A stretch of 64,000 nt of DNA, from IMG/VR virus record IMGVR_UViG_3300028045_000001, positions 1 through 64,000 of that record; one strand, 5' to 3'. Shown piece after piece: positions 8,101 to 22,086 of this stretch (positions within the stretch are counted from its first letter, which is position 1; every line of letters starts with the position of its first letter). The position numbers were made by a program, and so were the translations under genes. Below the pieces are notes generated by a model, which saw only the letters and a program-made list of their open reading frames with translations, did not search any database and had not been told where the DNA came from.

Positions 8101-8253
8101 ATGACAATTCATAATGAACTTCCAGCTAAGCTATTTACAGAAGCATTTATAATGCATACTGAAAACACCTTATCGCAATTTAAAGAGATATTGGATGCTC
8201 TAAGTGAACGAATGGATGTTGTGCAGGCAAGCATGGAAAAACCGATCAGATGA
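8101..8253 (+). CDS. 50-aa paralog of the 7824 ORF, overlapping the start of the DUF285 gene
   Basis: Strong RBS (aggagg); upstream aaaataaaacttagg shared with the 7824 gene; TGA overlaps ATG at 8250. Confidence 0.55.
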
Positions 8254-10379
8254 TCTCGGACCTTTCACATAGAATGGAATTAAATGAGGAGTATATGAAA
8301 AATCAAGAAACAGTAGTGATACCAACTTACGATAGCCAAATTTTATTGCAAACTGACATGGATGCATATAAGTTAGGATGCAAATGGGCAGTGTTAATAA
8401 TCAATAGTAGCTGCGAACTAAAGTTTGAAAACGAGATAAACCGTTCCGAAGCAGACGATCTCATATCCAATACAAAAAATATTATGCTACAAATACAAAC
8501 GACAATAGATAGTTTAGGTATACAAAAAACGATTGTACAAGACAACTCACTAATGGATGAACCAGGTATCATACGCGTAGCTCTCATAGATAAAGAAGAA
8601 GGCATCGTGGACGGAGATATCCCATTATGTATAGCGATATGCTCAGATGAAGATTTAATTGAAGCAGCCGGAATGTGGCTCACTATTGTGTATCGGTTAA
8701 AGATAGGGTGTGAGATTGATTACACTAAATCCGAAAAAGAACGACTCCCACATTTTGAATACCTTGCCACAGTACGACCTGCCAATGCGACAGACAAGGA
8801 AGATTCGACAATGCCAAGTACTTATATTCTCATCGCCCATGCTGTTGCGACTGCCCCTCGGAGTGAAGAGGAACTACGTAAGCATAAAGGTTCGTTTATA
8901 ACAAAGTGGCAAGGACAAAAGATTACCTTACCGTTAGATAAATCCGGAACATATGACTTCGAAATCCATTGGGGCGACGGTGCACACGATAAAGTCATAG
9001 GGTACGATCATAGTAGAATCTCACACACATATGCCGATGGCGAGGAGGTGCATACCATAACCATTTATGGGACTGTAGAAGGATTCGGGTTTGATTATTC
9101 ACCGGGGGCAGGCGTAGCGGATATACTCGATGTACTTCAGTGGGGAGATGTCAAGTTACATAACAACGGAGCTCAGTTTGCACATTGTACAAAGTTAAAG
9201 GGATTCAGTGCTAAGGATGTTCCGGATTTATCTGATGTTACCAATATGTGCGGTATGTTCGGTAAGGCTATTTCTTTCAACCAAGATATATCTAAATGGG
9301 ATGTAAGCAGTGTTACTAATATGGAGCAGATGTTCTGTTACGCCATAGTCTTCAATCAAAACATCTCCAATTGGGATGTGAGTAATGTTACTACTATGGC
9401 TGGCATGTTTAGAGGTGCCGCATCATTCAACCAAGATATATCCAAATGGGATGTAAGCGGTGTTACTAATATGAGGGATATGTTCCATGAGGATACTTCT
9501 TTCAATCAAGCCTTATCTAACTGGGATGTTAGTAGTGTTACCAATATGAACCGCATGTTTTATATGGCTACCTGTTTCAATCAGGAGATCTCTAAGTGGG
9601 ATGTTGGAAATGTTACCGATATGGATGGCATGTTCATGTATGCTGTATCCTTCAACCAAGATATCTCCAACTGGGATGTGAGTAGTGTTACTGGTATGGG
9701 TGCGATGTTCCAGCGAGCTTCATCCTTCGATCAAGACATATCCAAATGGGATGTTAGTAATGTTACCGATATGATGGACATGTTCCGTTGCGCCATAGTC
9801 TTTAACCAAGACATATCCAAATGGGATGTTAGTAGCGTAACTGATATGCAGGATATGTTCCATGCAGCTACATCCTTTAACCAGGATATCTCTAAGTGGG
9901 ATGTAAGCAGCGTAACTGATATGGAGGATATGTTCCATTCAGCTCCATACTTCAATCAGGATGTATCTAACTGGGACGTTAGTAGTGTTACTAATATGAA
10001 CGGCATGTTCCATGAAGCTAAGGCTTTCGATCAAGATATCTCCAAATGGAATGTCGGCAGTGTAACTGATATGCACGGGATGTTCCGAGGGGCTCTTTCC
10101 TTCGATCAAGCTATCTCTAACTGGGATGTGAGTAATGTTACCAACATGAGCGGGATGTTCTATAATGCTGTTCGTTTCGACAAATGTATATATAGCTGGG
10201 ATGTAAGCAAGGTCACTAATATGAGGTGTATGTTCTATGGGGCTACCTGTTTCAACCAGGATATTTCTGAGTGGGACGTGAGTAACGTCACTAATGTACA
10301 AAGCATAGTCGGGCTTGCTCCAAGTTTTAAGCGAAATCTCCCCAATTTTAAAGATTGCGCCAATGTGATAGTTAGATAA
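8250..10379 (+). CDS. BspA/DUF285 leucine-rich-repeat protein with PKD-like domain
   Basis: FITKW...IHWGDG domain followed by 14 full 25-aa repeats of consensus FNQDISxWDVSxVTxMxxMFxxAxS. Confidence 0.9.
9274..10323 (+). repeat. 75-bp coding tandem repeat (DUF285 units)
   Basis: Recurring ttcaa(c/t)caagatat(a/c)tc..a.tgggatgt at 75-nt period; boundaries approximate. Confidence 0.8.
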
Positions 10380-10397
10380 GTTGTTTTGTACATAGGG

Positions 10398-10428
10398 CCG
10401 CTACACTGGGAATATCCCAGTGTAGCGG
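10398..10428 (+). terminator. intergenic hairpin
   Basis: 14-bp stem ccgctacactggga/tcccagtgtagcgg, then T-run. Confidence 0.75.
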
Positions 10429-10446
10429 TTCAATTTTTTATACTTA

Positions 10447-10454
10447 TATATTAC
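10447..10454 (+). promoter_or_regulatory. early promoter motif TATATTAC
   Basis: Exact motif after hairpin and T-run. Confidence 0.6.
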
Positions 10455-10509
10455 ATTTATGAAGCGCTATAAAGTTCATATAAATTTAAATACATTACAG
10501 GAGATTATT

Positions 10510-11067
10510 ATGCAATATGGATATTGTGAAAAATGTGGTCAACTAAGTACAGGCAGGTACCCTTCACGTAAGTGTATGAATGTTGATTGTAAAGGGGAGG
10601 ATGGATACGCCATAGATGAGTTATTCGGGGAATTAATTATCAGGTTACATAGCAATGGTATTGTTACTTCGAATTGTTGTTCCGGACATACTCAACTACG
10701 TGCAAGATCAATAGATACACTTTATATGCAATTTAAAGTATCAGCGGATCGTTTTGATAACACCTTTTTAAAGAGGTGTAATGAAATGGTCCCTAACTTT
10801 CCGGAATGTGACTACAACTTTGAATTATGGTGTAACAAGCAAACCGATGTCACGTACTTCAACCTTGTACTGAAATTAAAATCTAAGGAGGATTCGAAAT
10901 GGCCTACTGAGGCAACTGAACGGCAAATATACCACGTCAGTAATCTTTACAACGTATTATCTGATCCAGGGATGATGCAATTTTTATTTTCATTAACTGA
11001 CGAAGAAGAGAAGCTTAGGTACGCCAGATACAAACTATCAAAGGGCCAAATAGGGGGGCACAAATAA
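10510..11067 (+). CDS. Zn-binding CCSGH-family protein (paralog 2)
   Basis: YCEKCG...CMNVDC...YAIDELFGELIIRLHSNGIVTSNCCSGH; start reassigned to the ATG after RBS ggag. Confidence 0.65.
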   Translation: MQYGYCEKCGQLSTGRYPSRKCMNVDCKGEDGYAIDELFGELIIRLHSNGIVTSNCCSGHTQLRARSIDTLYMQFKVSADRFDNTFLKRCNEMVPNFPECDYNFELWCNKQTDVTYFNLVLKLKSKEDSKWPTEATERQIYHVSNLYNVLSDPGMMQFLFSLTDEEEKLRYARYKLSKGQIGGHK

Positions 11068-11600
11068 TGAGATGCTTTTATTGTAAGTCATGTGGGGTAG
11101 TACATCGTGCGGGGTACCATCCTACTAATTGTAAAAATATGTGTTGCGATGGGACGGTATATGAGATAGATGAGCTGTTTGCAGAATTGATTGTGAAGTT
11201 ACATGGATTGGGCATAGTCACAACCGAATGTTGTTCTGGCCATGCCCATGATGAAAAATCAATTGGGGCGATATATATTTCATTCGCAGTTAAAGGAGCG
11301 AAGACGGAATTCATCAAAAACCACGTTGTAGTCTCACTTAATAAGCAGGCACACGAAGCTTATAAATTTGAGGTCATAGAAAAGGAGGACGAGTATGAGA
11401 GCACCATTAGACTCTGCGTAAAACCAGAATTTAGTGACGTATACATCAATGATTCCCCAACCTGTACAATTTTGAATCACACTAAGTCTTTCATTGCAAT
11501 GTTACTGTATACTCCAAAAATCATAAAGATGCTGTATAGCTTAACTGGAGAGAAAGAAAAACTTAAATACGCTAGATATAGATGTAAGTTACATGCCTAA
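11067..11600 (+). CDS. Zn-binding CCSGH-family protein (paralog 3)
   Basis: FYCKSCG...YEIDELFAELIVKLHGLGIVTTECCSGH; C-terminus LT.E.EKL.YARY shared with paralog 2. Confidence 0.65.
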   Translation: MRCFYCKSCGVVHRAGYHPTNCKNMCCDGTVYEIDELFAELIVKLHGLGIVTTECCSGHAHDEKSIGAIYISFAVKGAKTEFIKNHVVVSLNKQAHEAYKFEVIEKEDEYESTIRLCVKPEFSDVYINDSPTCTILNHTKSFIAMLLYTPKIIKMLYSLTGEKEKLKYARYRCKLHA

Positions 11601-11602
11601 CT

Positions 11603-11624
11603 GTATGGGGGACACCCCCCATAC
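11603..11624 (+). terminator. intergenic hairpin
   Basis: gtatggggg/cccccatac stem after the stop codon. Confidence 0.6.
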
Positions 11625-11661
11625 TTCCACAGCTTTGATGTCTTCCAATTTTTTTCATCTA

Positions 11662-11669
11662 TATATGAC
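11662..11669 (+). promoter_or_regulatory. early promoter variant TATATGAC
   Basis: One mismatch to consensus, same T-run context, upstream of the first BTLCP gene. Confidence 0.4.
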
Positions 11670-11750
11670 TTATATGAACAACAAAGTTTCTATACCGTAC
11701 TAACGTTATCTAAATCATCTATATTTAATTTTTAAATGGAGGTCATCGAC

Positions 11751-12365
11751 ATGAAGAAGGAGTTACTGTTGGCTACAATTGCAATTGTGTGTATTTCCGG
11801 ATGTGATGTTAACCTTGATATTGGGCCTGATGAAAGCACCAGTGGAGATGTCACAAATCCATATGGCGTGCATTCTCATCGTAACGCGGCTGTTCCCAAA
11901 GCCTGGTCTAAATTCTGTGCCCGCTATAATCAACCAATTGCTTCGAAAGACTATGGAAAAAGGTTTCAGGATCTAAGGGAGATCTTTCACCCGCTATTCG
12001 ATAATTTCGATCATGTTGAAGACATAGATCATTGGGGAGTCGAAGAGCAATGGGATATCATGCCTGACGACGATCTTCGTGGGGATTGTGAGGACTTTGC
12101 ACTTACCCTAAGGGCTCGACTTATTAGAAATGGATTTCCCATGCATGATGTCCGCATTGCTACTTGTCATATATTGAGGAAAGGCAAGCCTATGCATCAC
12201 GCGGTCGCTTTGGTTGAGGTCGATAGAGGTGATGTCTATGTGGTTGATCCAAGTGGAATATATAAATTTAAAGAGTATCGAGTAGTGTCCTGGAATAAGG
12301 TATTGGATGAGAGTGGCATATATTGGGTCATGATAGATAATATCCCAGGTACAATCAAACTTTAG
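11751..12365 (+). CDS. transglutaminase-like cysteine peptidase (BTLCP/LapG-like) lipoprotein, triad intact
   Basis: Lipobox ISGC; WGVEEQW...RGDCEDFALTLR...HHAVALVE...VVD. Confidence 0.85.
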   Translation: MKKELLLATIAIVCISGCDVNLDIGPDESTSGDVTNPYGVHSHRNAAVPKAWSKFCARYNQPIASKDYGKRFQDLREIFHPLFDNFDHVEDIDHWGVEEQWDIMPDDDLRGDCEDFALTLRARLIRNGFPMHDVRIATCHILRKGKPMHHAVALVEVDRGDVYVVDPSGIYKFKEYRVVSWNKVLDESGIYWVMIDNIPGTIKL

Positions 12366-12366
12366 G

Positions 12367-12396
12367 GGTAGAGGGAGAGCATGCTCTCCCTCTACC
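12367..12396 (+). terminator. 30-bp perfect palindrome after the stop codon
   Basis: ggtagagggagagcatgctctccctctacc equals its own reverse complement. Confidence 0.7.
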
Positions 12397-12420
12397 TGAA
12401 CTCATTATTTTTTTTATTTA

Positions 12421-12428
12421 TATGTTAC
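12421..12428 (+). promoter_or_regulatory. early promoter variant TATGTTAC
   Basis: One mismatch to consensus, after palindrome and T-run. Confidence 0.4.
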
Positions 12429-12482
12429 AATCATAGTACAACGATGGTATGTGAAATTTAATTTATAGGGAGTAAAAAAAAT

Positions 12483-13520
12483 ATGGTAGCCAATATTGAA
12501 AAAATTTTAAGCACGATAGTTAGTGAATATAAATCATGGTGTCAAAAAAATAATGTTAAAGATTTTAATAATGAAGATTATAAATATTGTTTTATTGCGG
12601 ATTTTTTTAAACTTAATTCACAAGAACGACGCTTCACTGTTTTAATATCAAAGAAATGCTTAGAAGTATGTGAAGTCATACTCTATGGGGAATCTTTTGA
12701 ATATATGAAAAACGAAGAAAATTCTCTTTGGTTTTATACGGTAATAAATATGACATTCATGGAAAATTTACTTAACTGGGGTACTTCTATTCGTGTAGCA
12801 TGGTTTGAAATTGATGAGAAAGAATATTGTTTTACACATTTCACTCTTAATCTTGATATAGAATCATGGGGAGATTTTATTAAAGCGACTCGTGAATTTA
12901 CAAGAATGAGCTTAACGCCCACAGACTCAGTTGGATCTATAAATACAATTACATATGAAATGGGTTGTAGAATAGCAAAGGATATAATAAAATATTCTAA
13001 AACCAATGATTTATTATTTAAAGTAAAACAAATATTAGTGCGACTGCAGCACATAATGTTTAGCTTTAAAATAAATAAAAGATTTGTATTGACCAGCGAT
13101 AAGAACTTAAAAAATTATAATAATATAAAAATATATTTAATAGATAATACAGAACCACTTAATAGTTGTATATCGCATCTTGATCCAGATGATGTATTTA
13201 CAACGATACCACTTGACCGATTTTATTCGTTTGAAGAAGTAATTGATTCAACTACATTATGTATAAATGTATTGTCTGAAAAAGATTTAATCATTGCGTC
13301 TGGAATATATAGTTTTATTGGAAGCTGCTTATACAACGAATTTAGTATCGATTGTGTTGAAGATAGATGTATAGATGATTCTTATAAAATGCGCTTGCTG
13401 CAAAGCAAAGAAAAAAAGACACTATGTATAGAAAAGGGAGACTATGGCGAAAGGGGTCGTTTATATATAGATGATCTTGTCTATGTCACTATAGAAAATA
13501 TAGACGAAGTTAAATTTTAA
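12483..13520 (+). CDS. hypothetical protein in a visibly lower-GC segment
   Basis: N-terminal half paralogous to the next ORF (YKY.FI.D.F...KKCLEVCE.ILY..FEY.KNEEN.LW). Confidence 0.7.
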   Translation: MVANIEKILSTIVSEYKSWCQKNNVKDFNNEDYKYCFIADFFKLNSQERRFTVLISKKCLEVCEVILYGESFEYMKNEENSLWFYTVINMTFMENLLNWGTSIRVAWFEIDEKEYCFTHFTLNLDIESWGDFIKATREFTRMSLTPTDSVGSINTITYEMGCRIAKDIIKYSKTNDLLFKVKQILVRLQHIMFSFKINKRFVLTSDKNLKNYNNIKIYLIDNTEPLNSCISHLDPDDVFTTIPLDRFYSFEEVIDSTTLCINVLSEKDLIIASGIYSFIGSCLYNEFSIDCVEDRCIDDSYKMRLLQSKEKKTLCIEKGDYGERGRLYIDDLVYVTIENIDEVKF

Positions 13521-13530
13521 TCCAAGGAAA

Positions 13531-14031
13531 ATGCGTATGTCAGATAATATTAAAAAATACCTAGATGTACTAATTAAACAATATGAAGAATGGATTAAAG
13601 GTAGCGACTATTATGAGGCATGGGTTGAAGAAAATAAATATATTGAAAATTTTAATGATGTAGATTATAAATATTATTTCATTTCAGATGTTTTTGAATT
13701 TACTACATATGAAAATTACTACTCTGCATTAATGGCAAAAAAATGTCTGGAGGTATGTGAAACTATACTCTATAAGAATTTTGAATACATCAAAAATGAA
13801 GAAAATGCGCTATGGTATAACATAATAATTAATATGCCAATTTTAAATGATAAACTTAATTTAAATTCATCTATTCATGAAATACGATTTGAGATTGATG
13901 GGGGGACTAAATATGAAAGTTATTGGTTTCCATATAAATTAACTACTGAATCATGGGGAGAATTCATTAAAGCAATCCGCGAGTTTATACAAACGGAATT
14001 TTATAAACATAATGCACATATTGTAGTATAA
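13531..14031 (+). CDS. hypothetical protein, paralog of the 12483 N-terminal domain
   Basis: Shared motifs KKCLEVCE and ESWGEFIKA. Confidence 0.7.
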   Translation: MRMSDNIKKYLDVLIKQYEEWIKGSDYYEAWVEENKYIENFNDVDYKYYFISDVFEFTTYENYYSALMAKKCLEVCETILYKNFEYIKNEENALWYNIIINMPILNDKLNLNSSIHEIRFEIDGGTKYESYWFPYKLTTESWGEFIKAIREFIQTEFYKHNAHIVV

Positions 14032-14077
14032 ATGTCTTTCAATGTTTATTAGTTATATATAACTTGACTGAAAGAAG
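14031..14077 (+). repeat. 47-bp duplicated promoter cassette, copy 1
   Basis: aatgtctttcaatgtttattagttatatataacttgactgaaagaag; copy 2 at 15767-15813 differs by one base; contains TATATAAC at 14056-14063. Confidence 0.85.
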
Positions 14078-14124
14078 GAAAGTATATAACTAATAAACTT
14101 AAATACATTGGAGGACACACTATC

Positions 14125-14739
14125 ATGAAAAAGAATATCTTAAATGCAATAGTTGTAATTTTTGTAGTATTGAATATGGTTGCTTGCGATAGCTCAGCCG
14201 ATGGAGATCAATCTCGATCTGGATCTTATAACAATCAAGTATCCAGGATCAAAGCTTATGATGAGTTCTTAGAGAGAGCAGGTCACGAAGTCCCAACAGC
14301 TCCTGAAAAATCCACTGCTGATCTTCAAAGAGTTTATAATGAACTTAGAGACAACTTCACTTACATGAGCGATAAGGAACAATACAATGTAGAAGATTAT
14401 TGGACCATCATGTCAGATGACAATCTTGTTGGAGATGCCGAAGACTTTGTGTTGACTCTTCGTAAGAAACTGATGGATGATGGGTTTAGACTGGCTAATG
14501 CACGAATAGCGCGATGCTATGTCCCAAGAGAAGACAATAAGTATGACTCTAAATACGTCAGCATCAACCATACTGTGCTTCTTGTAGAAGTCGAAATGGG
14601 TAGAGTGTATGTTGTAGATTCAGATGCCCATTATGATTTTTATAACTTTCCTGTGGTAGAGTGGGCTGACATGCTTGATGAAACTGGTGACTATTGGGTC
14701 AAGTTGGATATCCCTGGAAACAGCGATCGGATGATGTAA
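14125..14739 (+). CDS. BTLCP/LapG-like lipoprotein, catalytic Cys replaced by Ala
   Basis: Lipobox MVAC; GDAEDFVLTLR in place of GDCED; NHTVLLVE...VVD. Confidence 0.8.
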   Translation: MKKNILNAIVVIFVVLNMVACDSSADGDQSRSGSYNNQVSRIKAYDEFLERAGHEVPTAPEKSTADLQRVYNELRDNFTYMSDKEQYNVEDYWTIMSDDNLVGDAEDFVLTLRKKLMDDGFRLANARIARCYVPREDNKYDSKYVSINHTVLLVEVEMGRVYVVDSDAHYDFYNFPVVEWADMLDETGDYWVKLDIPGNSDRMM

Positions 14740-14743
14740 TAAC

Positions 14744-14781
14744 TATACAGGTACTGGGCGATATCGCCCAGTACCTGTATA
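14744..14781 (+). terminator. 38-bp perfect palindrome
   Basis: tatacaggtactgggcgat|atcgcccagtacctgtata. Confidence 0.7.
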
Positions 14782-14841
14782 CAAATAAACATTATTTTTT
14801 TACCATGTACTGATGTGCCGTCTTTCAATAAACCTTGGTTA

Positions 14842-14849
14842 TATATAAC
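14842..14849 (+). promoter_or_regulatory. early promoter variant TATATAAC
   Basis: Same ggttatatataactt context as the 47-bp cassette. Confidence 0.5.
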
Positions 14850-14904
14850 TTATATGAGGAATAAAAAATTATACAATCAATTTAACTACATTGGAGGACG
14901 GACT

Positions 14905-15702
14905 ATGAAAAAGAATATATTAATTGCGATATCTACACTATTCATGATGTTTACTATGGTTGCTTGTGATGGGAGCAGTGGTGGGGGTGGTGCCTCCGGC
15001 GATGACCTATCGGATTCCGGCGAGCTCACCGGAGATCTTGGCACAGACATCATCATAGATCAATATGTTGGGAACACTACTCCGATTATATCCGTTGGTC
15101 AACCAACTGGACGAGTGCGGGCGTATGATGATTTCTTAAGAAGGGATGGGCAGGATGTTCCAGTGGCTCCGAATAAAAATTCGTTTGATCTGAAAAAAGC
15201 GCATAAGGCATTCAGAAAAAAATTCACCTACATGCACGACATAGATAAATACGGTGTAGATGAATATTGGACTATTATGCCTGATGATGATCTTGTTGGG
15301 GATTGCGAAGACTTTGCTCTAACCTTTCGTGAGAAATTAATTGAAGCTGGATTTACTCCACCAAACGTTAGGATAGCAACCTGCGTAATGCCAAATGGAT
15401 ATAGAGATAATAGCCATCAGACTTATCATGCTGTACTCATCGTAGAAGTTTTTTGGGGTGAGGTGTATGTAGTAGATTCCAAGAGATGTTTGAAGTTCGA
15501 TAGCTTTAAAGTAATAGAGTGGGATAAAGTACTTGATGAAACTGGCAACTATTGGGTCAAGATGCGCATACCTAAGGATAAAGGAAATGGCGATCCAGGT
15601 AATGATAATAAAATTGAAGAAGAGGAAACCGAGAAGGAGGACATGGAAGACGACGAACGAAAAGATGGTCCAATAGGCTATTATGATAGACACTATGCAT
15701 AA
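14905..15702 (+). CDS. BTLCP/LapG-like lipoprotein, triad intact, acidic C-terminal tail
   Basis: Lipobox MVAC; YGVDEYW...GDCEDFALTFR...YHAVLIVE...VVD; start at the ATG after ggagg. Confidence 0.85.
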   Translation: MKKNILIAISTLFMMFTMVACDGSSGGGGASGDDLSDSGELTGDLGTDIIIDQYVGNTTPIISVGQPTGRVRAYDDFLRRDGQDVPVAPNKNSFDLKKAHKAFRKKFTYMHDIDKYGVDEYWTIMPDDDLVGDCEDFALTFREKLIEAGFTPPNVRIATCVMPNGYRDNSHQTYHAVLIVEVFWGEVYVVDSKRCLKFDSFKVIEWDKVLDETGNYWVKMRIPKDKGNGDPGNDNKIEEEETEKEDMEDDERKDGPIGYYDRHYA

Positions 15703-15709
15703 TTCAATC

Positions 15710-15749
15710 CTTACATGTTGTTGACCACACTTGGTCAACAACATGTAAG
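15710..15749 (+). terminator. intergenic hairpin
   Basis: 18-bp stem, 4-nt loop, followed by T-run. Confidence 0.75.
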
Positions 15750-15766
15750 AATCATTTATTTTTTTT

Positions 15767-15813
15767 AATGTCTTTCAATGTTTATTGGTTATATATAACT
15801 TGACTGAAAGAAG
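15767..15813 (+). repeat. 47-bp duplicated promoter cassette, copy 2
   Basis: Matches 14031-14077 with one mismatch; TATATAAC at 15792-15799. Confidence 0.85.
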
Positions 15814-15852
15814 TAAAATATAAAACTAATTTAACTATATTGGAGGATGACA

Positions 15853-16470
15853 ATGAAAACAAATTTTATCAATACAATGATAATAATTACTGTAATGTTC
15901 GCTACAGCTGCATGTAAAGAAGATGCATCTATTAGTGATTATATGAATAGCGACGCCACCACAGCAGTTGAATCCATGGGTCGACCAACAAGAAGGGTTA
16001 GGGCTTATGATGACTTCTTAAAAAGAACTGGTAAGAAAGTTAATGCCATTCCAAAAAAGAACTCATTCGATCTTATACGAGTATACGACGAGCTCAGAGA
16101 TAATTTTACTTATATGCGCGACATGGAACAATACGGTGTGGAAGAATACTGGACTGTTATGTCGGACGATGATCCTGTTGGGGATTGTGAAGACTTTGCT
16201 CTAACTCTTCGTGCACGATTGATAGCCGATGGGTTCTCTCCAGTGAATGTCAGGATTGCAACTTGTTACGTACCAACCTCGTATACTAAATCCGATGATC
16301 CAGAAAAGCGACTGAATCATGCAGTTCTTATAGTTGAAATTAATAATGGCCAAGTGTATGTAGTTGATAATGGAGACCACTATAAGTTTCATGAATTTGA
16401 GGTAATTAACTGGGACCGCATGCTTGATGAGACTGGAAATTATTGGGTCAATATGAACGTGTCCAGCTAA
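15853..16470 (+). CDS. BTLCP/LapG-like lipoprotein, triad intact
   Basis: Lipobox TAAC; YGVEEYW...GDCEDFALTLR...NHAVLIVE...VVD. Confidence 0.85.
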   Translation: MKTNFINTMIIITVMFATAACKEDASISDYMNSDATTAVESMGRPTRRVRAYDDFLKRTGKKVNAIPKKNSFDLIRVYDELRDNFTYMRDMEQYGVEEYWTVMSDDDPVGDCEDFALTLRARLIADGFSPVNVRIATCYVPTSYTKSDDPEKRLNHAVLIVEINNGQVYVVDNGDHYKFHEFEVINWDRMLDETGNYWVNMNVSS

Positions 16471-16483
16471 AGATTAGACCTAA

Positions 16484-16512
16484 TGTAGGGTGGGCAATAT
16501 GCCCACCCTGTA
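16484..16512 (+). terminator. intergenic hairpin
   Basis: agggtgggca/tgcccaccct stem followed by T-run. Confidence 0.7.
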
Positions 16513-16554
16513 GTGTATTTTTTTATATTTCTATAAAACTAATTGGAGGATGTT

Positions 16555-17157
16555 ATGAAAGGGATCTTTATAAACGTGACCCTAATTGGCCTACTGCTAC
16601 TTGGACTCGCTTGCGAAGAAACAGAAGTTACCCATTCAAAAATAGGTAAGCATAATAGATGGAGGCATGCCGGGTACGATGACTTTCTTAAGACACGTGG
16701 GCAAAAAATTTTCGATAACCCAAAGAAGTTCCTTGTCGATTTTCGAAAGATATACGACGAGCTTAGAGATAATTTCACGTATATGGGTGACGAAGAACAG
16801 TATGGCAAAGAAGACTATTGGACCATTATGCCTGACGACAATCTGGTTGGGGATGATGAGGATTTTGTGCTAACCCTCAGAGAAAGATTAGTTAGTAGTG
16901 GTTTTAATAAAGCTAACGTAAGGATTGCCAGATGTTATAAACCGAGGGAGGATAATAAATATGATTCGGAGTACCTTATGTTCAATCATGTTGTGGCCCT
17001 TGTTGAAATTGAAATGGGAAGGTTGCTTGTAGCAGATACAGATGACTACTACAACTTCTATCGTTTTCCAGTAGTCAGTTGGTACGACATGCTTGATGAG
17101 ACTGGCGACTATTGGGTCAAGTTGGATATGCCAGGAAATTCGGACAAAATGGAATAA
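16555..17157 (+). CDS. BTLCP/LapG-like lipoprotein, catalytic Cys replaced by Asp
   Basis: Lipobox GLAC; GDDEDFVLTLR; shares REDNKYDS and the PGNSD.M tail with the 14125 ORF. Confidence 0.8.
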   Translation: MKGIFINVTLIGLLLLGLACEETEVTHSKIGKHNRWRHAGYDDFLKTRGQKIFDNPKKFLVDFRKIYDELRDNFTYMGDEEQYGKEDYWTIMPDDNLVGDDEDFVLTLRERLVSSGFNKANVRIARCYKPREDNKYDSEYLMFNHVVALVEIEMGRLLVADTDDYYNFYRFPVVSWYDMLDETGDYWVKLDMPGNSDKME

Positions 17158-17159
17158 CT

Positions 17160-17187
17160 ACAACGCCTGGACATGTCCAGGCGTTGT
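17160..17187 (+). terminator. 28-bp perfect palindrome
   Basis: acaacgcctggaca|tgtccaggcgttgt. Confidence 0.65.
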
Positions 17188-17219
17188 GTAACTTATTTAA
17201 ATACATTGGAGGACATGTC

Positions 17220-17861
17220 ATGAAAAATAAAATTATCAGTATGATGTTAATGGGTGCAATTGTCCTTAATGTAGTTGCATGTGTAGAAGTGACAACTACC
17301 ACAACTACTACAGCTACTGGCGAACCTATTGTAATGGGCGACTACGATATCTCAGGTAATGAAACCCCACTCGAATACATTGATCGACCTTCAAGGAGAG
17401 TTCGATTTTATGATGATTTTTTGAGAAGGACTAATAAGAAAGTTCCCTTAAGTCCTAAAAAGAATGTTGGTGATCTTAAAAAAATATATAAGAAACTTAG
17501 GTCTACTTTTACCTATGTGTCTGACATAAATCAATATGGTGTGGATGATCATTGGGTAGTTATGCCGGACAATAATCGCACAGGGGACTGTGAGGATTTT
17601 GCTTTGACTCTTCGTGAAAAGTTAATTGCAGATGGGTTTGAAAAATCCAACGTGAGATTCGCCACGTGTTACACTCCTAAAAAATATGAGGAAGATGCAA
17701 AGAACAATTACCATGCGGTCCTTATTGTTGAGTTATTTTGGGGAAAAGTGTATGTTGTGGATTATAAGTATTGTGTAGAGTTTCGTAAATTCCCTGTTGA
17801 GAAATGGGATCATGTATTAGATGAGACGGGGAAGTATTGGATCCGGATGGAGATTCGTTAA
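17220..17861 (+). CDS. BTLCP/LapG-like lipoprotein, triad intact
   Basis: Lipobox VVAC, Thr run, YGVDDHW...GDCEDFALTLR...YHAVLIVELFWG..VVD. Confidence 0.85.
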   Translation: MKNKIISMMLMGAIVLNVVACVEVTTTTTTTATGEPIVMGDYDISGNETPLEYIDRPSRRVRFYDDFLRRTNKKVPLSPKKNVGDLKKIYKKLRSTFTYVSDINQYGVDDHWVVMPDNNRTGDCEDFALTLREKLIADGFEKSNVRFATCYTPKKYEEDAKNNYHAVLIVELFWGKVYVVDYKYCVEFRKFPVEKWDHVLDETGKYWIRMEIR

Positions 17862-17906
17862 TTGTTAACGAAATAAATAATAAATTTTAAACGGGGGGTG
17901 TTTAGT

Positions 17907-18962
17907 ATGGCAGAAGAAGCGTATGAAGAAGAGCTGCATTTATTAGCCCTTATGAAAAAACTATTCACGATGGGCGTTGTTTGTTGCAGTGTTGTTTGGG
18001 CAGGATTTAATGTTTGCAGCACTGTCTGGGATTGGGGCAAGGCAAAGTATGAGACACACAAGCAACAATCCCATACTGAGAAACGGTATCTACGACGAAT
18101 GAAATCACTCGTTGCCAGCTACAATGCTCTCGAATCACAAGTTGCCAAAAACGATAGACGATTAACTGAAATTGAAGGAACGATGACCAGTAAATCCGTT
18201 GGACGAACTTCGAACTCATCTAAGGTCAAACTGTGGCCAAGTAATACTATCAGATACCACATTGATGAGAAAATTGAGGATTGGGATTTAACCCAAATGA
18301 TCGATGAGGCATTTGAAAAAATAAGTGAGAATACTTGTTTAAAATTTCATAAGCTTCCGATACTTTGGAAGGATAGGAGTAGCTTTCTGCTAATCACATT
18401 GACGGAGAGTGACGAGGACTATCCTAATGCGACATTGGGCTATTCGCAAAGAAATCAAGTTGAATTGAGTATGTATTCTGAATTTGATACTGTATACCAT
18501 GAGTTTCTACATGCACTTGGATTGCCCCATGAACACCAAAGACCTGATGCTGAAATAGTCGTTAATTTTGATAACCTTGAAGGTGATAGTACTTGGTACA
18601 GAAAATATCCAAAAGATATGTACCCATACCCTTTGGATAAATTCATCTTTGATGCTGACTCCATTATGGCATATTGCTCATATAGCGAGACAACACAACG
18701 AGGGAAGAAAACTATTAATTACGGGAGAGCGCAGGGGTCACTCAGTCCCACTCCAATTGACTACATGAAGATCAATTGTATGTACTGTGGCTCTAATCCT
18801 CCACCGAAAGAGACCCAGTGGTACATGGCACTACTGAACAGGTATTCCCATAAAGGCTCACCAAAGAAGTTGAAGGTGGTCATAGAAGGGGAAGATGGCG
18901 AACGTGATGTACTTGTCACTTTAGATGAAATGGCATCTTTTGGTAATAAAAAAGAATACTGA
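17907..18962 (+). CDS. astacin-family (M12A) zinc metalloprotease with N-terminal hydrophobic segment
   Basis: HEFLHALGLPHEHQRPD signature, Met-turn DSIMAY, WP..TIRY, conserved Cys. Confidence 0.85.
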   Translation: MAEEAYEEELHLLALMKKLFTMGVVCCSVVWAGFNVCSTVWDWGKAKYETHKQQSHTEKRYLRRMKSLVASYNALESQVAKNDRRLTEIEGTMTSKSVGRTSNSSKVKLWPSNTIRYHIDEKIEDWDLTQMIDEAFEKISENTCLKFHKLPILWKDRSSFLLITLTESDEDYPNATLGYSQRNQVELSMYSEFDTVYHEFLHALGLPHEHQRPDAEIVVNFDNLEGDSTWYRKYPKDMYPYPLDKFIFDADSIMAYCSYSETTQRGKKTINYGRAQGSLSPTPIDYMKINCMYCGSNPPPKETQWYMALLNRYSHKGSPKKLKVVIEGEDGERDVLVTLDEMASFGNKKEY

Positions 18963-19085
18963 TAGTTACATGACCGGGAAAACAGATCCTCTTGGCGGCT
19001 GGTATAGTGAAGGTATAATGGGATTTGTGAGAATAGAAGACATGATAGATTTTAGTAGGTAAATTAAAACGAAAGGAGACGTAAA

Positions 19086-20084
19086 ATGAAAAAAGGTAAA
19101 ACAACAATCAAGGGCAGTAATGCAAAAATGGCTACATTGGCAATTTGTGGGATAGTTAACATCATTTTTATTTGGACTTTTTGTAGTGCAACGGTGACTG
19201 TTGCAGAGGATGTCGCTGTAACGCACGAGGTACAAGAAGAACAAGTTCCATTTTCAATGGAAGAGCATCGTGTACGATGTCGAAAAGCTACCACTTTAGG
19301 TAGAGAGCACCTTCTGTCAAAGCCCCACACTGTGCAAGGATGGCCCGATAAGGTCATTCGATACTATATCGATAAAGACAGATTGACGGATCCATATGTT
19401 GTTGAAGAAGTAATAAATGTATTCGACGCCATAGCAGAAACCACATGTTTAGACTTCATCCGACTTGATGGACCAGAATCATACAATGTGCAGGTTAAGG
19501 TATTATTGGTAACATCCACTACAAATGGGAGGTACCCCACTTCAACATTAGGATACAATGAGATCGCGAATATAATTAGATTGCGCAATGATTCTCAAAT
19601 ATGGACTATCTATCATATGGTTTTACATGCGTTGGGTTTGACTCATGAGAACCAGCGACCCGACGCAGAGCTTCTTGTTGATATGGATAACATACAAGAA
19701 GAGTTTAAATGTAATTTTGAGAAGCTCCCTGCAAGTTGCTTTCTGTACCCAGTAGATAAGTTCATTTTTGAGGTAAGTTCCATTATGTCGTATAGGCCAT
19801 ACTCTGCCTGTAAAGATTGTAGCAAAAGAACTATCGACTACGGGCGCGAGAAGGAGGGACAACGTGAACCGACATCTATTGATTATATGAAATTGGAGTA
19901 CATTTACTGTGGACTTAATCCGCCACCTAAAGAAACCCAATGGTATTTGTCTTTTCTACATAGGTACCATAATCACTCAAAGCCTGAGGATTTGACGGTT
20001 ACAATAAAAAGTAACGGTATAACTTCATACGTTAATTTTGGTGGCATGGCGTCGCCACTCGGCGATCATGTGAAACCGGAGTAA
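19086..20084 (+). CDS. astacin-like protein lacking the catalytic Glu
   Basis: HMVLHALGLTHENQRPD (E to M), SSIMSY; shares YCG.NPPPKETQWY with the upstream paralog; N-terminal TM segment. Confidence 0.8.
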   Translation: MKKGKTTIKGSNAKMATLAICGIVNIIFIWTFCSATVTVAEDVAVTHEVQEEQVPFSMEEHRVRCRKATTLGREHLLSKPHTVQGWPDKVIRYYIDKDRLTDPYVVEEVINVFDAIAETTCLDFIRLDGPESYNVQVKVLLVTSTTNGRYPTSTLGYNEIANIIRLRNDSQIWTIYHMVLHALGLTHENQRPDAELLVDMDNIQEEFKCNFEKLPASCFLYPVDKFIFEVSSIMSYRPYSACKDCSKRTIDYGREKEGQREPTSIDYMKLEYIYCGLNPPPKETQWYLSFLHRYHNHSKPEDLTVTIKSNGITSYVNFGGMASPLGDHVKPE

Positions 20085-20180
20085 TAAAACAAGGGTTTAT
20101 TTAATCTTATCGACGAGACTGTGGATCGAATACCCACAGTCTCGTTTGTATCAGTATAAAAACTATAAGGGAGAACTGTC

Positions 20181-21470
20181 ATGAAAACAGACACTACCGC
20201 GTTCGTAACAAAGTGGGAAGGGAAACGAGTCACGTTACCATTACACAAAAATGGAACATTTGATTTTGTAGTAGACTGGGGCGACGGTGTAGCAGATCAT
20301 ATAACTGAACATGATCAAAAAGAAATTATACACGATTATGAGGATGGCCAGTTAACGCATGAAGTAGCTATATCTGGCACCATAGAAGGGTTTGGATTTA
20401 TTGTCGATGACCCACTTAGTTACACTGCCATAAATTCGCTCCCCTTTGGATCTTTTCCATTAAATAACACCGACGGCTTTGCGCAGCAGTCCAGGACCAT
20501 TGCATTAGTAAAGAAATTCACGAACTGGTGTATGGGGTTTGTCACATCCAAGCAAGCCATAGTGTCAGGACCAAAGGAAGGAAGCCAATTTATGGACTTT
20601 ATTAAGTCAGCCCAAGCTATGGCCCCAAAACCGAGCGACTGCATATTACTCGATGTCTTACAGTGGGGGGCCGTTAAGTTACACAATGGAGGGTGTCAAT
20701 TTACAGATTGTACAAAGTTAAAAGGCTTCAGTGCTAAGGATGTTCCAGATTTATCTAATGTTACTAATATGATGGGCATGTTCCTCAGAGCTACATCGTT
20801 CAATCAAGACTTATCTAAATGGGATGTGGGTAGTGTTACTGATATGAAAGATATGTTCTGTGGCGCTACTTCCTTTAACCAAAATATCTCTAAATGGGAT
20901 GTGAGTAGTGTTACTGATATGAGCGGTGCGTTCCTCAGGGCTGCATCTTTCAACCAAGACATATCTAATTGGGACGTTAGCAGTGTCACTAATATGAAAG
21001 ATATGTTCTTGGGTGCCGAAGTCTTCGATCAAGACATATCTAACTGGGATGTTGGCAAGGTTACTGATATGGCGAATATGTTTAATGGCGCTACATTATT
21101 CAATCAACCCATCTCTAACTGGAATGTTAACAGCGTCACCGATACAGCTGGGATGTTCTATGAAGCTTCATCCTTTAACCAAGACATATCCAATTGGGAC
21201 GTGGGTAGGGTAACTGACATGAGGTTTATGTTCCACAATGCCACTGCCTTCAATCAAGATATTTCTAAGTGGAATGTTGGCAGTGTTAGGAATATGGATT
21301 GTATGTTCATGTCGGCTGTATCCTTCAACCAAGATATCTCTAACTGGGATGTGAGTAGCGTAACTGCTATGGGAGGTATGTTCTATGAAGCCAGCTCATT
21401 CGATCAGAATATATCCGATTGGGATGTAATCAACACGACCAAAGGAAGTCCCATTAAACAAACAAATTAA
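20181..21470 (+). CDS. BspA/DUF285 leucine-rich-repeat protein
   Basis: FVTKWEG...VDWGDG domain, about 70-aa insertion, 8 full plus 1 partial 25-aa repeats. Confidence 0.9.
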   Translation: MKTDTTAFVTKWEGKRVTLPLHKNGTFDFVVDWGDGVADHITEHDQKEIIHDYEDGQLTHEVAISGTIEGFGFIVDDPLSYTAINSLPFGSFPLNNTDGFAQQSRTIALVKKFTNWCMGFVTSKQAIVSGPKEGSQFMDFIKSAQAMAPKPSDCILLDVLQWGAVKLHNGGCQFTDCTKLKGFSAKDVPDLSNVTNMMGMFLRATSFNQDLSKWDVGSVTDMKDMFCGATSFNQNISKWDVSSVTDMSGAFLRAASFNQDISNWDVSSVTNMKDMFLGAEVFDQDISNWDVGKVTDMANMFNGATLFNQPISNWNVNSVTDTAGMFYEASSFNQDISNWDVGRVTDMRFMFHNATAFNQDISKWNVGSVRNMDCMFMSAVSFNQDISNWDVSSVTAMGGMFYEASSFDQNISDWDVINTTKGSPIKQTN

Positions 21471-21478
21471 TTTTGACC

Positions 21479-21525
21479 GCATGGACAAGACTGTCGGGAG
21501 TTCTATCCACAGTCTTGTCCGTGCT
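21479..21525 (+). terminator. intergenic hairpin
   Basis: gcatggacaagactgt/acagtcttgtccgtgc stem with one G-U pair. Confidence 0.65.
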
Positions 21526-21552
21526 AACAACATCTCATTATTTTTTTATTTA

Positions 21553-21651: not shown

Positions 21652-22086
21652 ATGATCAGTCAAGAGATAGAACCTATCATTGAATCATTTTTAGTGGTGG
21701 ATAAGGATAATAAGCAGAACGCGATATCATGTTCATTGATGCTTCATGGGAGGGTTAGTCCAGGATATCAGGATAGATACGGCTTACAGTTTAGAGGAAG
21801 ACGCGGTTATAAGCTATACAAGATGACTTGTGCAAAAACCGAATACATCTCACTGGTCCCTGACCCAAATGATGATAAATACCCAATCCATTCTGAAGAC
21901 TGTGGGAGCGACACTTGTTCAAGATTAACTTCCGGAATCTGTCCTGGCACTATCTTTGGTACATACTACACTGGTGCCGAAAGACCCAAACGAAATGAGT
22001 ATTCGGACCATCATTATCAATGCATACATCTGGATGATCAAATCCCACCTTATGATCCCCCACCAATATGCACCTGGGAAGAATAG
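21652..22086 (+). CDS. hypothetical Cys-containing protein
   Basis: RBS aaggag; no family recognised. Confidence 0.6.
   Translation: MISQEIEPIIESFLVVDKDNKQNAISCSLMLHGRVSPGYQDRYGLQFRGRRGYKLYKMTCAKTEYISLVPDPNDDKYPIHSEDCGSDTCSRLTSGICPGTIFGTYYTGAERPKRNEYSDHHYQCIHLDDQIPPYDPPPICTWEE

What the first reader, a model, noticed from the sequence alone, without database searches (positions are those of the whole stretch)
11600..21530. Candidate envelope-remodelling island: proteases, pseudo-proteases and an LRR binder in one block
Seen: about 10 kb of contiguous, co-oriented genes with six BTLCP lipoproteins, two astacins and a DUF285/BspA repeat protein, segmented by hairpins and early-promoter motifs. 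Eight of the eleven ORFs are exported or anchored proteases or their dead homologs. Inference: a coordinated module acting on the host cell surface or periplasm (biofilm escape, receptor masking or counter-defence), expanding by local duplication.
Basis: inference. Interest (0 to 1): 0.62.

Follow-up and report, generated by a model that had tools for sequence, protein, structure and literature searches.

The report
Exported protease gene cluster in phage
A marine giant (phiKZ-like) phage carries a 10-kb accessory block of eight exported protease-family genes, three of them missing a catalytic residue, which most likely cut or bind proteins of the host cell envelope early in infection; the targets are unknown.

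Summary
Window 11.7-21.5 kb has 11 co-oriented ORFs. [quoted passage not shown] Three protease genes lack a catalytic residue but are otherwise intact: BTLCP 14125-14739 (Cys to Ala), BTLCP 16555-17157 (Cys to Asp) and astacin 19086-20084 (Glu to Met).

The genome is a 240-kb phiKZ-like jumbo phage found in seawater metagenomes. Hairpins and a 48-copy, strand-specific AT-rich motif (core TATATATTAC) punctuate the block. The motif precedes only BTLCP1-4 and the unknown pair.

Five BTLCPs form one clade of old tandem duplicates with saturated dS. The first BTLCP groups with single-copy lipoprotein BTLCPs on other phage-like contigs.

The DUF285 gene has no export signal and belongs to a family scattered over the genome, so it is not shown to be part of the module. 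The nearest large relative lacks the block at the syntenic place.

Best reading: an early-expressed, exported protease and pseudo-protease set that acts on host envelope proteins. The targets and the host are unknown. I rate it a new variant of a known kind, because phage-borne BTLCP 'AMGs' are already described. Interest is moderate.

The parts
11603..11624 (+). GC-rich hairpin after the upstream Zn-ribbon gene
   Evidence: RNA fold of the intergenic region
11659..11669 (+). Early-promoter-like motif before BTLCP1 (core TATATATGAC, PWM 37 bits)
11751..12365 (+). BTLCP1. Signal peptide ending ISG-C and intact Cys-His-Asp. It is the copy closest to single-copy BTLCP lipoproteins on other phage-like contigs.
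   Evidence: Pfam E 1.1e-19; tree 99/97 with P0008-P0014
12366..12397 (+). Perfect 13-16 bp hairpin after BTLCP1
12418..12428 (+). Weaker early-promoter-like motif (core TATATGTTAC, 18 bits) before the unknown gene pair
12483..13520 (+). Unknown 345-aa protein with no export signal. Its N-terminal domain is a paralogue of the next gene (phrog_18399). Low-GC segment.
   Evidence: GC 0.30
13531..14031 (+). Unknown 166-aa protein (phrog_18399), no export signal. Among GenBank phages, homologues are found only in 47 Vibrio phages.
14053..14063 (+). Early-promoter-like motif before BTLCP2. The roughly 90-nt leader is nearly identical to the one before BTLCP4.
14125..14739 (+). BTLCP2, a pseudo-protease: nucleophile Cys replaced by Ala, with His, Asp and the flanking acidic residues kept. 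Signal peptide ends MVA-C.
14744..14781 (+). Perfect 17-bp hairpin after BTLCP2
14839..14849 (+). Early-promoter-like motif before BTLCP3
14905..15702 (+). BTLCP3. Intact triad, long Gly/Ser/Asp linker and an acidic C-terminal tail.
15710..15749 (+). Perfect 18-bp hairpin followed by a T-run, after BTLCP3
15789..15799 (+). Early-promoter-like motif before BTLCP4
15853..16470 (+). BTLCP4. Intact triad; this is the copy that was modelled (AF2 pLDDT 85.6, best fold match LapG).
16484..16512 (+). Hairpin followed by a T-run, after BTLCP4
16555..17157 (+). BTLCP5, a pseudo-protease: Cys replaced by Asp. Sister of BTLCP2 (100/99). No promoter motif upstream.
17159..17188 (+). Hairpin after BTLCP5
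17220..17861 (+). BTLCP6. Intact triad and a poly-Thr linker; weakly supported sister of BTLCP3.
17907..18962 (+). Astacin 1. N-terminal membrane anchor, about 60-aa pro-region, complete zinc motif HEFLHALGLPHE, Met-turn SIMAY, and a C-terminal extension shared with astacin 2.
19086..20084 (+). Astacin 2, a pseudo-protease: catalytic Glu replaced by Met (HMVLH), with the three zinc-binding His and the Met-turn Tyr kept. N-terminal anchor.
20108..20147 (+). Hairpin after astacin 2
20181..21470 (+). DUF285/PARCEL repeat protein with no signal peptide, one of 5-6 dispersed paralogues. It is adjacent to the exported set but not shown to belong to it.
21479..21523 (+). Hairpin closing the block. 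The next early-promoter-like motif is at 21550.

Best explanation
The block is a lineage-specific accessory island in the early-gene region of a marine phiKZ-like jumbo phage. It encodes a set of exported proteases and pseudo-proteases.

Shown:
- Six LapG-fold BTLCP domains sit behind lipoprotein-type signal peptides and flexible linkers. Four have an intact Cys-His-Asp triad. Two sister copies lack only the nucleophile.
- Two astacins have N-terminal membrane anchors. One has the full zinc site plus the catalytic Glu; the other lacks the Glu.
- BTLCP1-4 are each a single unit: early-type promoter motif, Shine-Dalgarno site, gene, hairpin.

Inferred:
- Shortly after DNA injection the virion RNA polymerase transcribes these units.
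- The host Sec and lipoprotein pathways deliver the products to the periplasmic face of the envelope.
- There the active enzymes cut host envelope or surface proteins such as adhesins, receptors or exopolysaccharide-machinery components. LapG does this to LapA-type adhesins, and HvyA acts on the capsule pathway.
- The nucleophile-less copies bind the same class of partners without cutting, as traps, competitors or regulators.
- The likely benefit is stripping or masking surface structures: exclusion of superinfecting phages, avoiding loss of progeny on cell debris, or detachment from particles or biofilm.
- The several diverged paralogues cover several targets or host variants.
For: - Family and fold: Pfam hits above cut-off. 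A profile of the six hits P. fluorescens LapG 4u65_E with the same GDCEDY/F motif. The AF2 model (pLDDT 85.6) has LapG structures as its top six Foldseek hits, probability 1.0.
- Export: hydrophobic N-termini occur only in the eight protease-family ORFs, with [A/G]-Cys lipobox-like ends. The model shows a low-confidence linker at residues 20-50 before the domain.
- Early expression: the 42-nt motif has 48 copies on the + strand at 10 bits or more (47 at 22 or more), against 0 on the - strand at 18 bits or more. Seven copies lie in 10.4-21.6 kb. RNAP-encoding jumbo phages have such AT-rich, roughly 10-nt early promoter motifs upstream of early operons (PMC7598289). The phage has a phiKZ-type split RNAP beta subunit and a gp87-like virion protein.
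- Selection: all paralogue pairs have saturated dS with dN 0.33-0.72. The two nucleophile-less copies are sisters (100/99), 58% identical, with intact ORFs and all other invariant residues kept.
- Sequence stability: contigs covering 14000-19500 are identical (no differing letters) in seawater metagenome runs from three studies, one of which may be the source of this assembly.
- Precedent: the closest non-self relatives are also lipobox BTLCPs on phage-like contigs. BTLCP was the most frequently identified 'AMG' in river single-virus genomes (PMC11283719). LapG and HvyA act in the periplasm on envelope targets (PMC3032545, PMC4241560).
Against: - There are no expression data; no RNA run holds the phage.
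- BTLCP5, BTLCP6, both astacins and the DUF285 gene have no recognisable early promoter.
- The host is unknown and the hints conflict. For a proteobacterium: phiKZ-like lineage, strong Shine-Dalgarno use, a Vibrio-phage-only domain, and a relative binned with an alphaproteobacterial MAG. For Bacteroidota: the best DUF285 hits.
- No substrate can be named.
- The proteins are not LapG orthologues (22 bits or less against a 320-bit cut-off) and no LapD-like partner is encoded in the block.
- Three of the six lipoboxes are non-canonical at position -4.
- A predicted pseudo/active BTLCP complex gave no verdict.
Confidence: 0.55

Rival explanations
1. A strict LapG mimic or decoy. The active copies cleave the N-terminal retention module of a host LapA-type giant adhesin and release the infected cell from surfaces. 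The nucleophile-less copies titrate the host LapD receptor so that host LapG is freed as well.
For: LapG is the best sequence and fold match. The acidic residues flanking the nucleophile (G-D-x-E-D) are invariant in all six copies; in LapG the calcium site lies next to the active site (PMC4359373). Many marine proteobacteria carry Lap-type systems (my own knowledge; for Vibrio see PMC6890996).
Against: The LapG equivalog model scores 17-22 bits against a 320-bit cut-off. Identity to LapG in the fold alignments is only 18-22%. HvyA shows that BTLCPs have non-adhesin roles. The proteins are lipid-anchored, whereas LapG is a soluble periplasmic protein. Host and adhesin are unknown.
Confidence: 0.15
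2. HvyA-like action. The BTLCPs shut down capsule or exopolysaccharide assembly of the infected cell, changing buoyancy, stickiness or access for other phages.
For: HvyA is a periplasmic BTLCP whose catalytic triad is needed to block capsulation, and that block changes phage susceptibility (PMC4241560). The nearest large relative of this phage was binned with an alphaproteobacterial MAG, and that paper describes BTLCPs as particularly widespread in Alphaproteobacteria.
Against: HvyA's molecular target is unknown, so nothing can be matched. No polysaccharide genes lie in the block. This reading does not explain the astacin pair.
Confidence: 0.1
3. Lysis or cell-wall accessory enzymes. As papain/transglutaminase-fold lipoproteins, the BTLCPs would cut peptidoglycan stem peptides or the Lpp-peptidoglycan link, as NlpC/P60, CHAP or pseudomurein isopeptidases do, helping entry or exit.
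For: Weaker fold hits include the pseudomurein endoisopeptidases PeiP and PeiW and a phage endolysin (ranks 12, 30, 43). The classic phage lipoproteins are outer-membrane spanins (my own knowledge).
Against: Those hits have E of 0.016 or worse, against 8e-6 to 1.6e-4 for LapG. The family-specific match is to PF06035, not to NlpC/P60 or CHAP. Early-type promoters are the opposite of what lysis genes would have. Six copies plus two astacins is not a lysis-cassette layout.
Confidence: 0.07
4. A self-contained phage protease cascade. The enzymes mainly process one another, for example removal of the astacin pro-region, or process other exported phage proteins, and host proteins are not the primary substrates.
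For: Astacins are made as zymogens that need another protease for activation (established for family M12A; 3lq0 pro-astacin appears among the hits). Astacin 1 has about 60 residues between its anchor and the mature-type N-terminus. BTLCP6, astacin 1 and astacin 2 have no strong hairpin between them and may be co-transcribed.
Against: A cascade still needs an end target. Single-copy BTLCP lipoproteins occur on other phage-like contigs without astacins in the 5-11 kb contigs recovered.
Confidence: 0.08
5. There is no coordinated function. The block is a drifting cluster of duplicated 'AMG' genes in a hyper-variable genome region, and some copies are decaying.
For: The nearest large relative has no counterpart of window 8.2-23.7 kb at the syntenic place. 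Three of the eight genes lack a catalytic residue.
Against: All ORFs are intact. dN is far below the saturated dS. The copies lacking a catalytic residue keep every other invariant residue. Promoter-leader cassettes are conserved better than the coding sequence. Export signals are kept in all eight.
Confidence: 0.05

Closest known systems
LapG (P. fluorescens, L. pneumophila): periplasmic Ca-dependent BTLCP that cleaves LapA-type adhesins
   Same: Same Pfam family and fold. Same G-D-C-E-D-[FY] nucleophile motif and Cys-His-Asp triad in four copies. Exported to the envelope.
   Different: Far below the LapG equivalog cut-off. Lipoprotein-type anchor with a long linker instead of a soluble periplasmic protein. 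Phage-encoded, in six copies, two without the nucleophile. No LapD or LapA genes nearby.
HvyA (Caulobacter): BTLCP that prevents capsulation
   Same: An exported BTLCP whose triad is needed for function, with an effect on the cell surface and on phage susceptibility (PMC4241560).
   Different: HvyA is a host gene embedded in a capsule export locus. It has no lipid anchor. Its relation to the phage clade was not tested by a tree.
Phage-borne BTLCP 'auxiliary' genes (river single-virus genomes, PMC11283719; Rhizobium phage L338C 'periplasmic protein'; relatives P0008-P0014 on phage-like contigs)
   Same: BTLCP1 is a member of this clade (99/97). The relatives share the lipobox and domain layout. 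One relative has also lost the nucleophile (Cys to Thr).
   Different: Those are single genes on the contigs recovered. Here there is a six-gene array with a derived five-member subclade, sister copies that both lack the nucleophile, and adjacent astacins. No function has been tested for any phage BTLCP.
Astacin family M12A (crayfish astacin, meprins, bacterial myroilysin and flavastacin, Legionella LegP)
   Same: PF01400 above cut-off. Zinc motif HExxHxxGxxHE plus the Met-turn Tyr in astacin 1. Astacin fold in the ESM Atlas model.
   Different: No relative other than each other in the word search of 5.8 billion proteins. No match in 50,697 GenBank phages or in PHROGs. N-terminal membrane anchor. 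A unique conserved C-terminal extension. One copy lacks the catalytic Glu. Far below the LegP cut-off.
Early phage lipoproteins that block receptors (T5 Llp, the Cor proteins of phi80 and N15); from my own knowledge
   Same: Phage lipoproteins made early and sent to the envelope, where they alter a surface protein to exclude superinfection and protect progeny.
   Different: Those act by binding, not by catalysis, and are small single genes unrelated in sequence. The resemblance is functional only and untested here.

Membership tests
BTLCP / Peptidase_C93 (Pfam PF06035) | Domain score above the curated cut-off (27 bits) | tested here: met
   40.3-71.2 bits for all six; the same six and no others in the genome
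BTLCP / Peptidase_C93 (Pfam PF06035) | Cys-His-Asp catalytic triad | tested here: inconclusive
   Met in four copies (11751, 14905, 15853, 17220). Cys replaced by Ala (14125) or Asp (16555) in two, with His and Asp kept in all. Triad geometry in the model could not be measured.
BTLCP / Peptidase_C93 (Pfam PF06035) | Transglutaminase-like (LapG) fold | tested here: met
   AF2 pLDDT 85.6. The top six Foldseek hits are LapG chains, probability 1.0, TM 0.44-0.52.
BTLCP / Peptidase_C93 (Pfam PF06035) | Export signal (the family is predicted to be periplasmic) | tested here: met
   Hydrophobic N-termini ending in [A/G]-Cys. No dedicated signal-peptide predictor was available.
LapG orthologue (NCBIfam NF045674, equivalog) | Score at or above 320 bits | tested here: not met
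   Best 21.8 bits
LapG orthologue (NCBIfam NF045674, equivalog) | Partner genes: LapD-type c-di-GMP receptor and LapA-type adhesin | tested here: not met
   No ORF in 8.2-22.6 kb has such domains. Host genes cannot be examined.
LapG orthologue (NCBIfam NF045674, equivalog) | Cleaves the adhesin retention module at a di-alanine site; Ca2+ dependence | not testable with these tools
   Needs biochemistry. Only the acidic residues flanking the nucleophile are seen to be invariant.
Astacin (M12A, Pfam PF01400) | Domain score above the cut-off (22.5 bits) | tested here: met
   66.7 and 68 bits
Astacin (M12A, Pfam PF01400) | Zinc and catalytic motif HExxHxxGxxHE, and the Met-turn with Tyr | tested here: inconclusive
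   Complete in 17907-18962. In 19086-20084 the Glu is Met while the three His, the Met-turn and the Tyr are kept.
LegP (NCBIfam NF045530, Legionella effector) | Score at or above 300 bits | tested here: not met
   39.9 and 50.7 bits: general astacin similarity only
DUF285 / PARCEL repeat surface proteins | Repeat domain above the cut-off | tested here: met
   333 bits for PF03382; TIGR02167 repeats
DUF285 / PARCEL repeat surface proteins | Signal peptide or lipoprotein signal, as in the bacterial surface proteins | tested here: not met
   None of the five N-termini examined is hydrophobic
Early promoters of RNAP-encoding (phiKZ-like) jumbo phages | Conserved AT-rich motif of about 10 nt, found bioinformatically upstream of early operons | tested here: met
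   48 sites, all on one strand, with bimodal PWM scores. Definition from PMC7598289.
Early promoters of RNAP-encoding (phiKZ-like) jumbo phages | Transcription start about 10 nt downstream of the motif centre; early timing | not testable with these tools
   No RNA run holds the phage

The most novel reading that the evidence does not exclude
A jumbo phage carries its own periplasmic proteolysis system built from matched active and inactive enzyme pairs: BTLCP with pseudo-BTLCP, and astacin with pseudo-astacin. Within minutes of infection this system strips or locks host surface adhesins or receptors. That would be superinfection exclusion, or forced detachment from marine particles, achieved by catalysis rather than by receptor-binding lipoproteins. 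The inactive copies would act as substrate traps or as decoys for host regulators.
Probability: 0.2. Interest if true: 0.8.

Novelty: new variant of a known kind. Interest (0 to 1): 0.55.

Why it matters
Phage BTLCP genes are repeatedly listed as 'auxiliary metabolic genes', yet none has a tested function.

This locus suits a first test well. It holds six diverged copies with natural nucleophile-less variants, each in a simple promoter-gene-terminator unit. Next to them are the only astacins I could find in a phage, using a tblastn search of 50,697 GenBank phage records and PHROGs.

If the proteins cut host envelope proteins, that would add a catalytic mechanism to phage control of the host surface (exclusion, dispersal, receptor removal). 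It would also bear on how phages affect particle attachment of marine bacteria. The retained pseudo-proteases would be a clear microbial case of pseudo-enzymes kept by selection beside their active paralogues.

Tried and rejected
- Near-identical DNA in GenBank phages: none.
- IMG/VR scans. A single BTLCP found nothing. The six-copy profile found only five weak loci. The gp87-like core protein found no relatives. The astacin pair found nine distant loci (27-37% identity), none with a BTLCP within 10 kb.
- Word-index protein search. BTLCP4 found only its own paralogues plus one 29% bacterial protein, on a contig of bacterial housekeeping genes. Astacin 2 found only astacin 1.
- Predicted complex of BTLCP6 (active) with BTLCP5 (nucleophile-less): no verdict, score 0.00. 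This is not evidence either way.
- ESM Atlas search for the unknown 166-aa protein: no hit at 0.9 or above and a poor model, so no lead.
- Simple sigma-70 and terminator scan: counts are not above shuffled controls. The real signals are the phage's own motif and long perfect hairpins.
- Scanning the whole 221-kb relative contig for BTLCP or astacin was not possible because the record is not held. Only 32 kb of it was read by walking along it.
- I considered a Bacteroidota host with surface-exposed lipoproteins, because of the acidic residues after the lipobox Cys and the DUF285 affinities. I set it aside because the phage uses Shine-Dalgarno sites heavily, which is unlike Bacteroidota.
- My recollection of a LapD-binding Trp on LapG was wrong. 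The Trp belongs to LapD, so I did not use it.
- dN/dS values as such are unusable because dS is saturated.
- No other genetic code was used.

Full report
WHAT THE WINDOW IS. The window is the first 64 kb of a 239,960-bp virus record with direct terminal repeats. It encodes a phiKZ-type split RNA polymerase beta subunit (phrog_2962, E 3e-87). It also encodes a 957-aa protein whose best cultured matches are phiKZ gp87 and its counterparts in 280 phiKZ-like phages, all at only about 25% identity. It is therefore a deep-branching, RNAP-encoding jumbo phage. Contigs from seawater metagenome runs in three studies, one of which may be the source of this assembly, are identical to it over 14000-19500. 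No RNA run holds it.

THE OBSERVATION. Eleven + strand ORFs fill 11736-21470.
- Six match Pfam PF06035 (BTLCP, Peptidase_C93) above the curated cut-off and are the only matches in the genome.
- Two match astacin PF01400.
- One is a DUF285/PARCEL repeat protein.
- Two (12483-13520 and 13531-14031) are paralogues of unknown function (phrog_18399).

Catalytic residues. Four BTLCPs read G-D-C-E-D-F at the nucleophile. Copy 14125-14739 reads GDAEDF and copy 16555-17157 reads GDDEDF. The His and Asp of the triad and 40 other invariant positions are kept in all six. Astacin 17907-18962 has the full HEFLHALGLPHE zinc motif and a SIMAY Met-turn. Astacin 19086-20084 has Met in place of the catalytic Glu but keeps the three His and the Met-turn Tyr.

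Export signals. A hydropathy scan shows that exactly these eight proteins, and none of their neighbours, begin with a strongly hydrophobic segment. In the six BTLCPs this segment follows Lys/Arg and ends in [A/G]-Cys. Three pass a strict PROSITE-like lipobox rule and three miss it by the residue at -4. I only moved six start codons, on the basis of Shine-Dalgarno spacing and the collection's own gene calls.

PUNCTUATION. Almost every gene is followed by a perfect GC-rich hairpin with a 10-18 bp stem. A 42-nt motif precedes several of them. It has an upstream TTTCAAT-like box, a T-run and the core TATATATTAC. A weight matrix built from it finds 48 sites on the + strand (47 of them at 22 bits or more) and none on the - strand at 18 bits or more. 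Reviews of RNAP-encoding jumbo phages state that a conserved AT-rich motif of about 10 nt can be found bioinformatically upstream of early operons, and that wherever it was tested it proved to be the virion-RNAP early promoter (PMC7598289). Seven of the 48 sites lie in 10.4-21.6 kb. They precede the ORF at 10459, BTLCP1, the unknown pair (a weaker site), BTLCP2, BTLCP3, BTLCP4 and the ORF at 21652.

No site, strong or weak, precedes BTLCP5, BTLCP6, either astacin or the DUF285 gene. Early expression is therefore a reasonable inference for the left half only. The right half needs read-through or another promoter class. Hairpins are a genome-wide feature: 85 have stems of 10 bp or more, and six lie in the 10-20 kb bin, a density similar to other motif-rich regions. 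The roughly 90-nt promoter-leader cassettes of BTLCP2 and BTLCP4 are almost identical, although the coding sequences have saturated synonymous divergence.

HISTORY. An exhaustive profile search of 1.84 billion representatives gave 1,492 BTLCP hits but only eight at E 1e-30 or better. Four of those are the phage's own. The closest outsiders, P0008-P0014, are 167-207-aa proteins, five of which pass the strict lipobox rule. Where context exists they sit as single genes on phage-like contigs with primase, helicase, methyltransferase or exonuclease genes.

In a maximum-likelihood tree, BTLCP2-6 form one clade (97/97). BTLCP1 groups with the outsiders (99/97). The two nucleophile-less copies are sisters (100/99). 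BTLCP3 and BTLCP6 are weakly supported sisters (94/73). That last point would fit duplication of an [inactive + active] gene pair but does not prove it. All pairs have saturated dS and dN of 0.33-0.72. The duplications are therefore old, and the copies, including the nucleophile-less ones, have been kept under purifying selection. One outsider, P0013, has independently replaced the nucleophile with Thr.

The two astacins are 38-43% identical to each other. They have no other relative in the word search of 5.8 billion proteins, none in 50,697 GenBank phages and no PHROG. Nine IMG/VR contigs carry distant astacin-like genes, and none has a BTLCP within 10 kb.

CONTEXT IN RELATIVES. The best large relative is a 221-kb NCBI contig binned with an alphaproteobacterial MAG (44% identity in the gp87-like protein). 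Walking 32 kb along it shows conserved synteny for window 23.7-32.4 kb. It shows no homologue of anything in window 8.2-23.7 kb. That contig instead carries other accessory genes at that place, including NADAR and a CCA-adding enzyme. The block is thus a lineage-specific island in a variable early region. Whether the relative has such genes elsewhere could not be checked.

WHAT BELONGS TO THE MODULE. The DUF285 gene is one of five or six paralogues scattered over early regions: 8250, 20181 and 62864 in the window, and 149128 and 152697 in the genome. None has a signal peptide, unlike the bacterial surface proteins of that family. Its best bacterial relatives are in marine Bacteroidota. Nothing links it to the exported proteases except adjacency. 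The two unknown genes are cytoplasmic by sequence and lie in a low-GC stretch. Among GenBank phages, their domain is shared only with 47 Vibrio phages. They interrupt the array between BTLCP1 and BTLCP2.

STRUCTURE. An AF2 model of BTLCP4 from a 45-sequence alignment has pLDDT 85.6. It shows a signal helix, a disordered linker (residues 20-50) and a confident domain. The six best Foldseek matches in the PDB are LapG from P. fluorescens and L. pneumophila (probability 1.0, TM about 0.5). Other transglutaminase or papain-like enzymes follow at much weaker scores. A profile of the six copies also hits LapG by sequence, with the same nucleophile motif.

MECHANISM. Shown: family, fold, catalytic status, export signals, gene-unit architecture, old tandem duplication, and selection on the copies lacking a catalytic residue.

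Inferred: early transcription by the virion polymerase; export and lipidation by the host; proteolysis of host envelope proteins by the four active BTLCPs and astacin 1; non-catalytic binding by the three inactive copies. The only characterised BTLCPs act in the periplasm on envelope targets. LapG cleaves LapA-type adhesins (PMC3032545, PMC4359373). HvyA blocks capsulation and thereby changes phage susceptibility (PMC4241560).

I therefore commit to an 'early exported protease set that strips or masks host surface proteins', with confidence 0.55. Adhesin release, capsule blockade, a lysis or cell-wall role, an internal protease cascade and functionless drift are the rivals. The proteins are not LapG orthologues, and no LapD or LapA partner is encoded nearby.

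HOST. Unresolved. A proteobacterial host is favoured by four hints: the phage lineage, heavy Shine-Dalgarno use (55% of 242 ORFs against 10% of random sites), the Vibrio-phage-only domain and the binning of the relative. The DUF285 affinities point to Bacteroidota.

NOVELTY. Phage-borne BTLCP genes are already reported as the most frequently identified 'AMG' in river single-virus genomes (PMC11283719), and one cultured Rhizobium phage has one. A recent preprint shows that huge phages encode envelope-associated proteins such as sortase B, PspA and OMPs, but it does not mention BTLCP, lipoproteins or adhesins. What is new here is the six-gene array with a derived subclade, the retained pseudo-proteases, and the adjacent active and inactive astacin pair in a phiKZ-like phage. 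I rate it a new variant of a known kind, of moderate interest, because no function is shown.

Noticed in passing
window 6923-7486, 10459-11067, 11067-11600: Three paralogous small proteins with Cys-rich zinc-ribbon-like N-termini (CxxC ... CxxxxC) and a shared IDxLFxELI segment lie just left of the block. No family match was found.
   Followed up: partly
window 8250-10379, 20181-21470, 62864-63955; genome 149128-151377 and 152697-153848: The DUF285/PARCEL repeat proteins form a dispersed family of five or six genes in motif-rich (early) regions. All lack signal peptides, and four share an N-terminal FVTKW...LPL...DWGDG module. The best bacterial relatives are in marine Bacteroidota (Reichenbachiella, Roseivirga, Cytophagales).
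   Followed up: partly
window 14032-14124 versus 15751-15846: The promoter-leader regions of BTLCP2 and BTLCP4 are almost identical over about 90 nt, although the coding sequences have saturated synonymous divergence. This points to strong constraint on the leader (possibly a regulatory RNA structure) or to gene conversion.
   Followed up: partly
whole genome (G000:C1): All 48 copies of the early-promoter-like motif are on the + strand of the record, clustered at about 4-22, 52-71, 103-108, 123-160 and 166-187 kb. Genes on the - strand (for example window 27.8-33.5 and 42.8-47.7 kb) have none.
   Followed up: partly
genome 145190-147250 (- strand): Another probable lipoprotein, 686 aa, N-terminus MKKFIAMLFVLFLMLGCIGC. 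It lies outside the window and was not characterised.
   Followed up: no
window 43196-45010 (- strand): Phage-encoded GroEL-like chaperonin (phrog_5725, E 1.6e-21).
   Followed up: no
P0013 (no contig context looked up); P0008 on L008; P0010 on L011: The phage-contig BTLCP lipoprotein clade includes another natural loss of the nucleophile (Cys to Thr in P0013), so pseudo-BTLCPs recur in this clade.
   Followed up: partly
window 12001-14000: GC falls to 0.30 over the two unknown phrog_18399 genes that split the BTLCP array, against about 0.38-0.40 around them. This suggests a separate, perhaps later, insertion.
   Followed up: no
L056 (IMGVR_UViG_3300035670_000085), 10001-10570 (+) and 13951-14502 (-): Another viral contig carries two distant astacin-like genes about 4 kb apart. 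Whether one of them lacks a catalytic residue was not examined.
   Followed up: no
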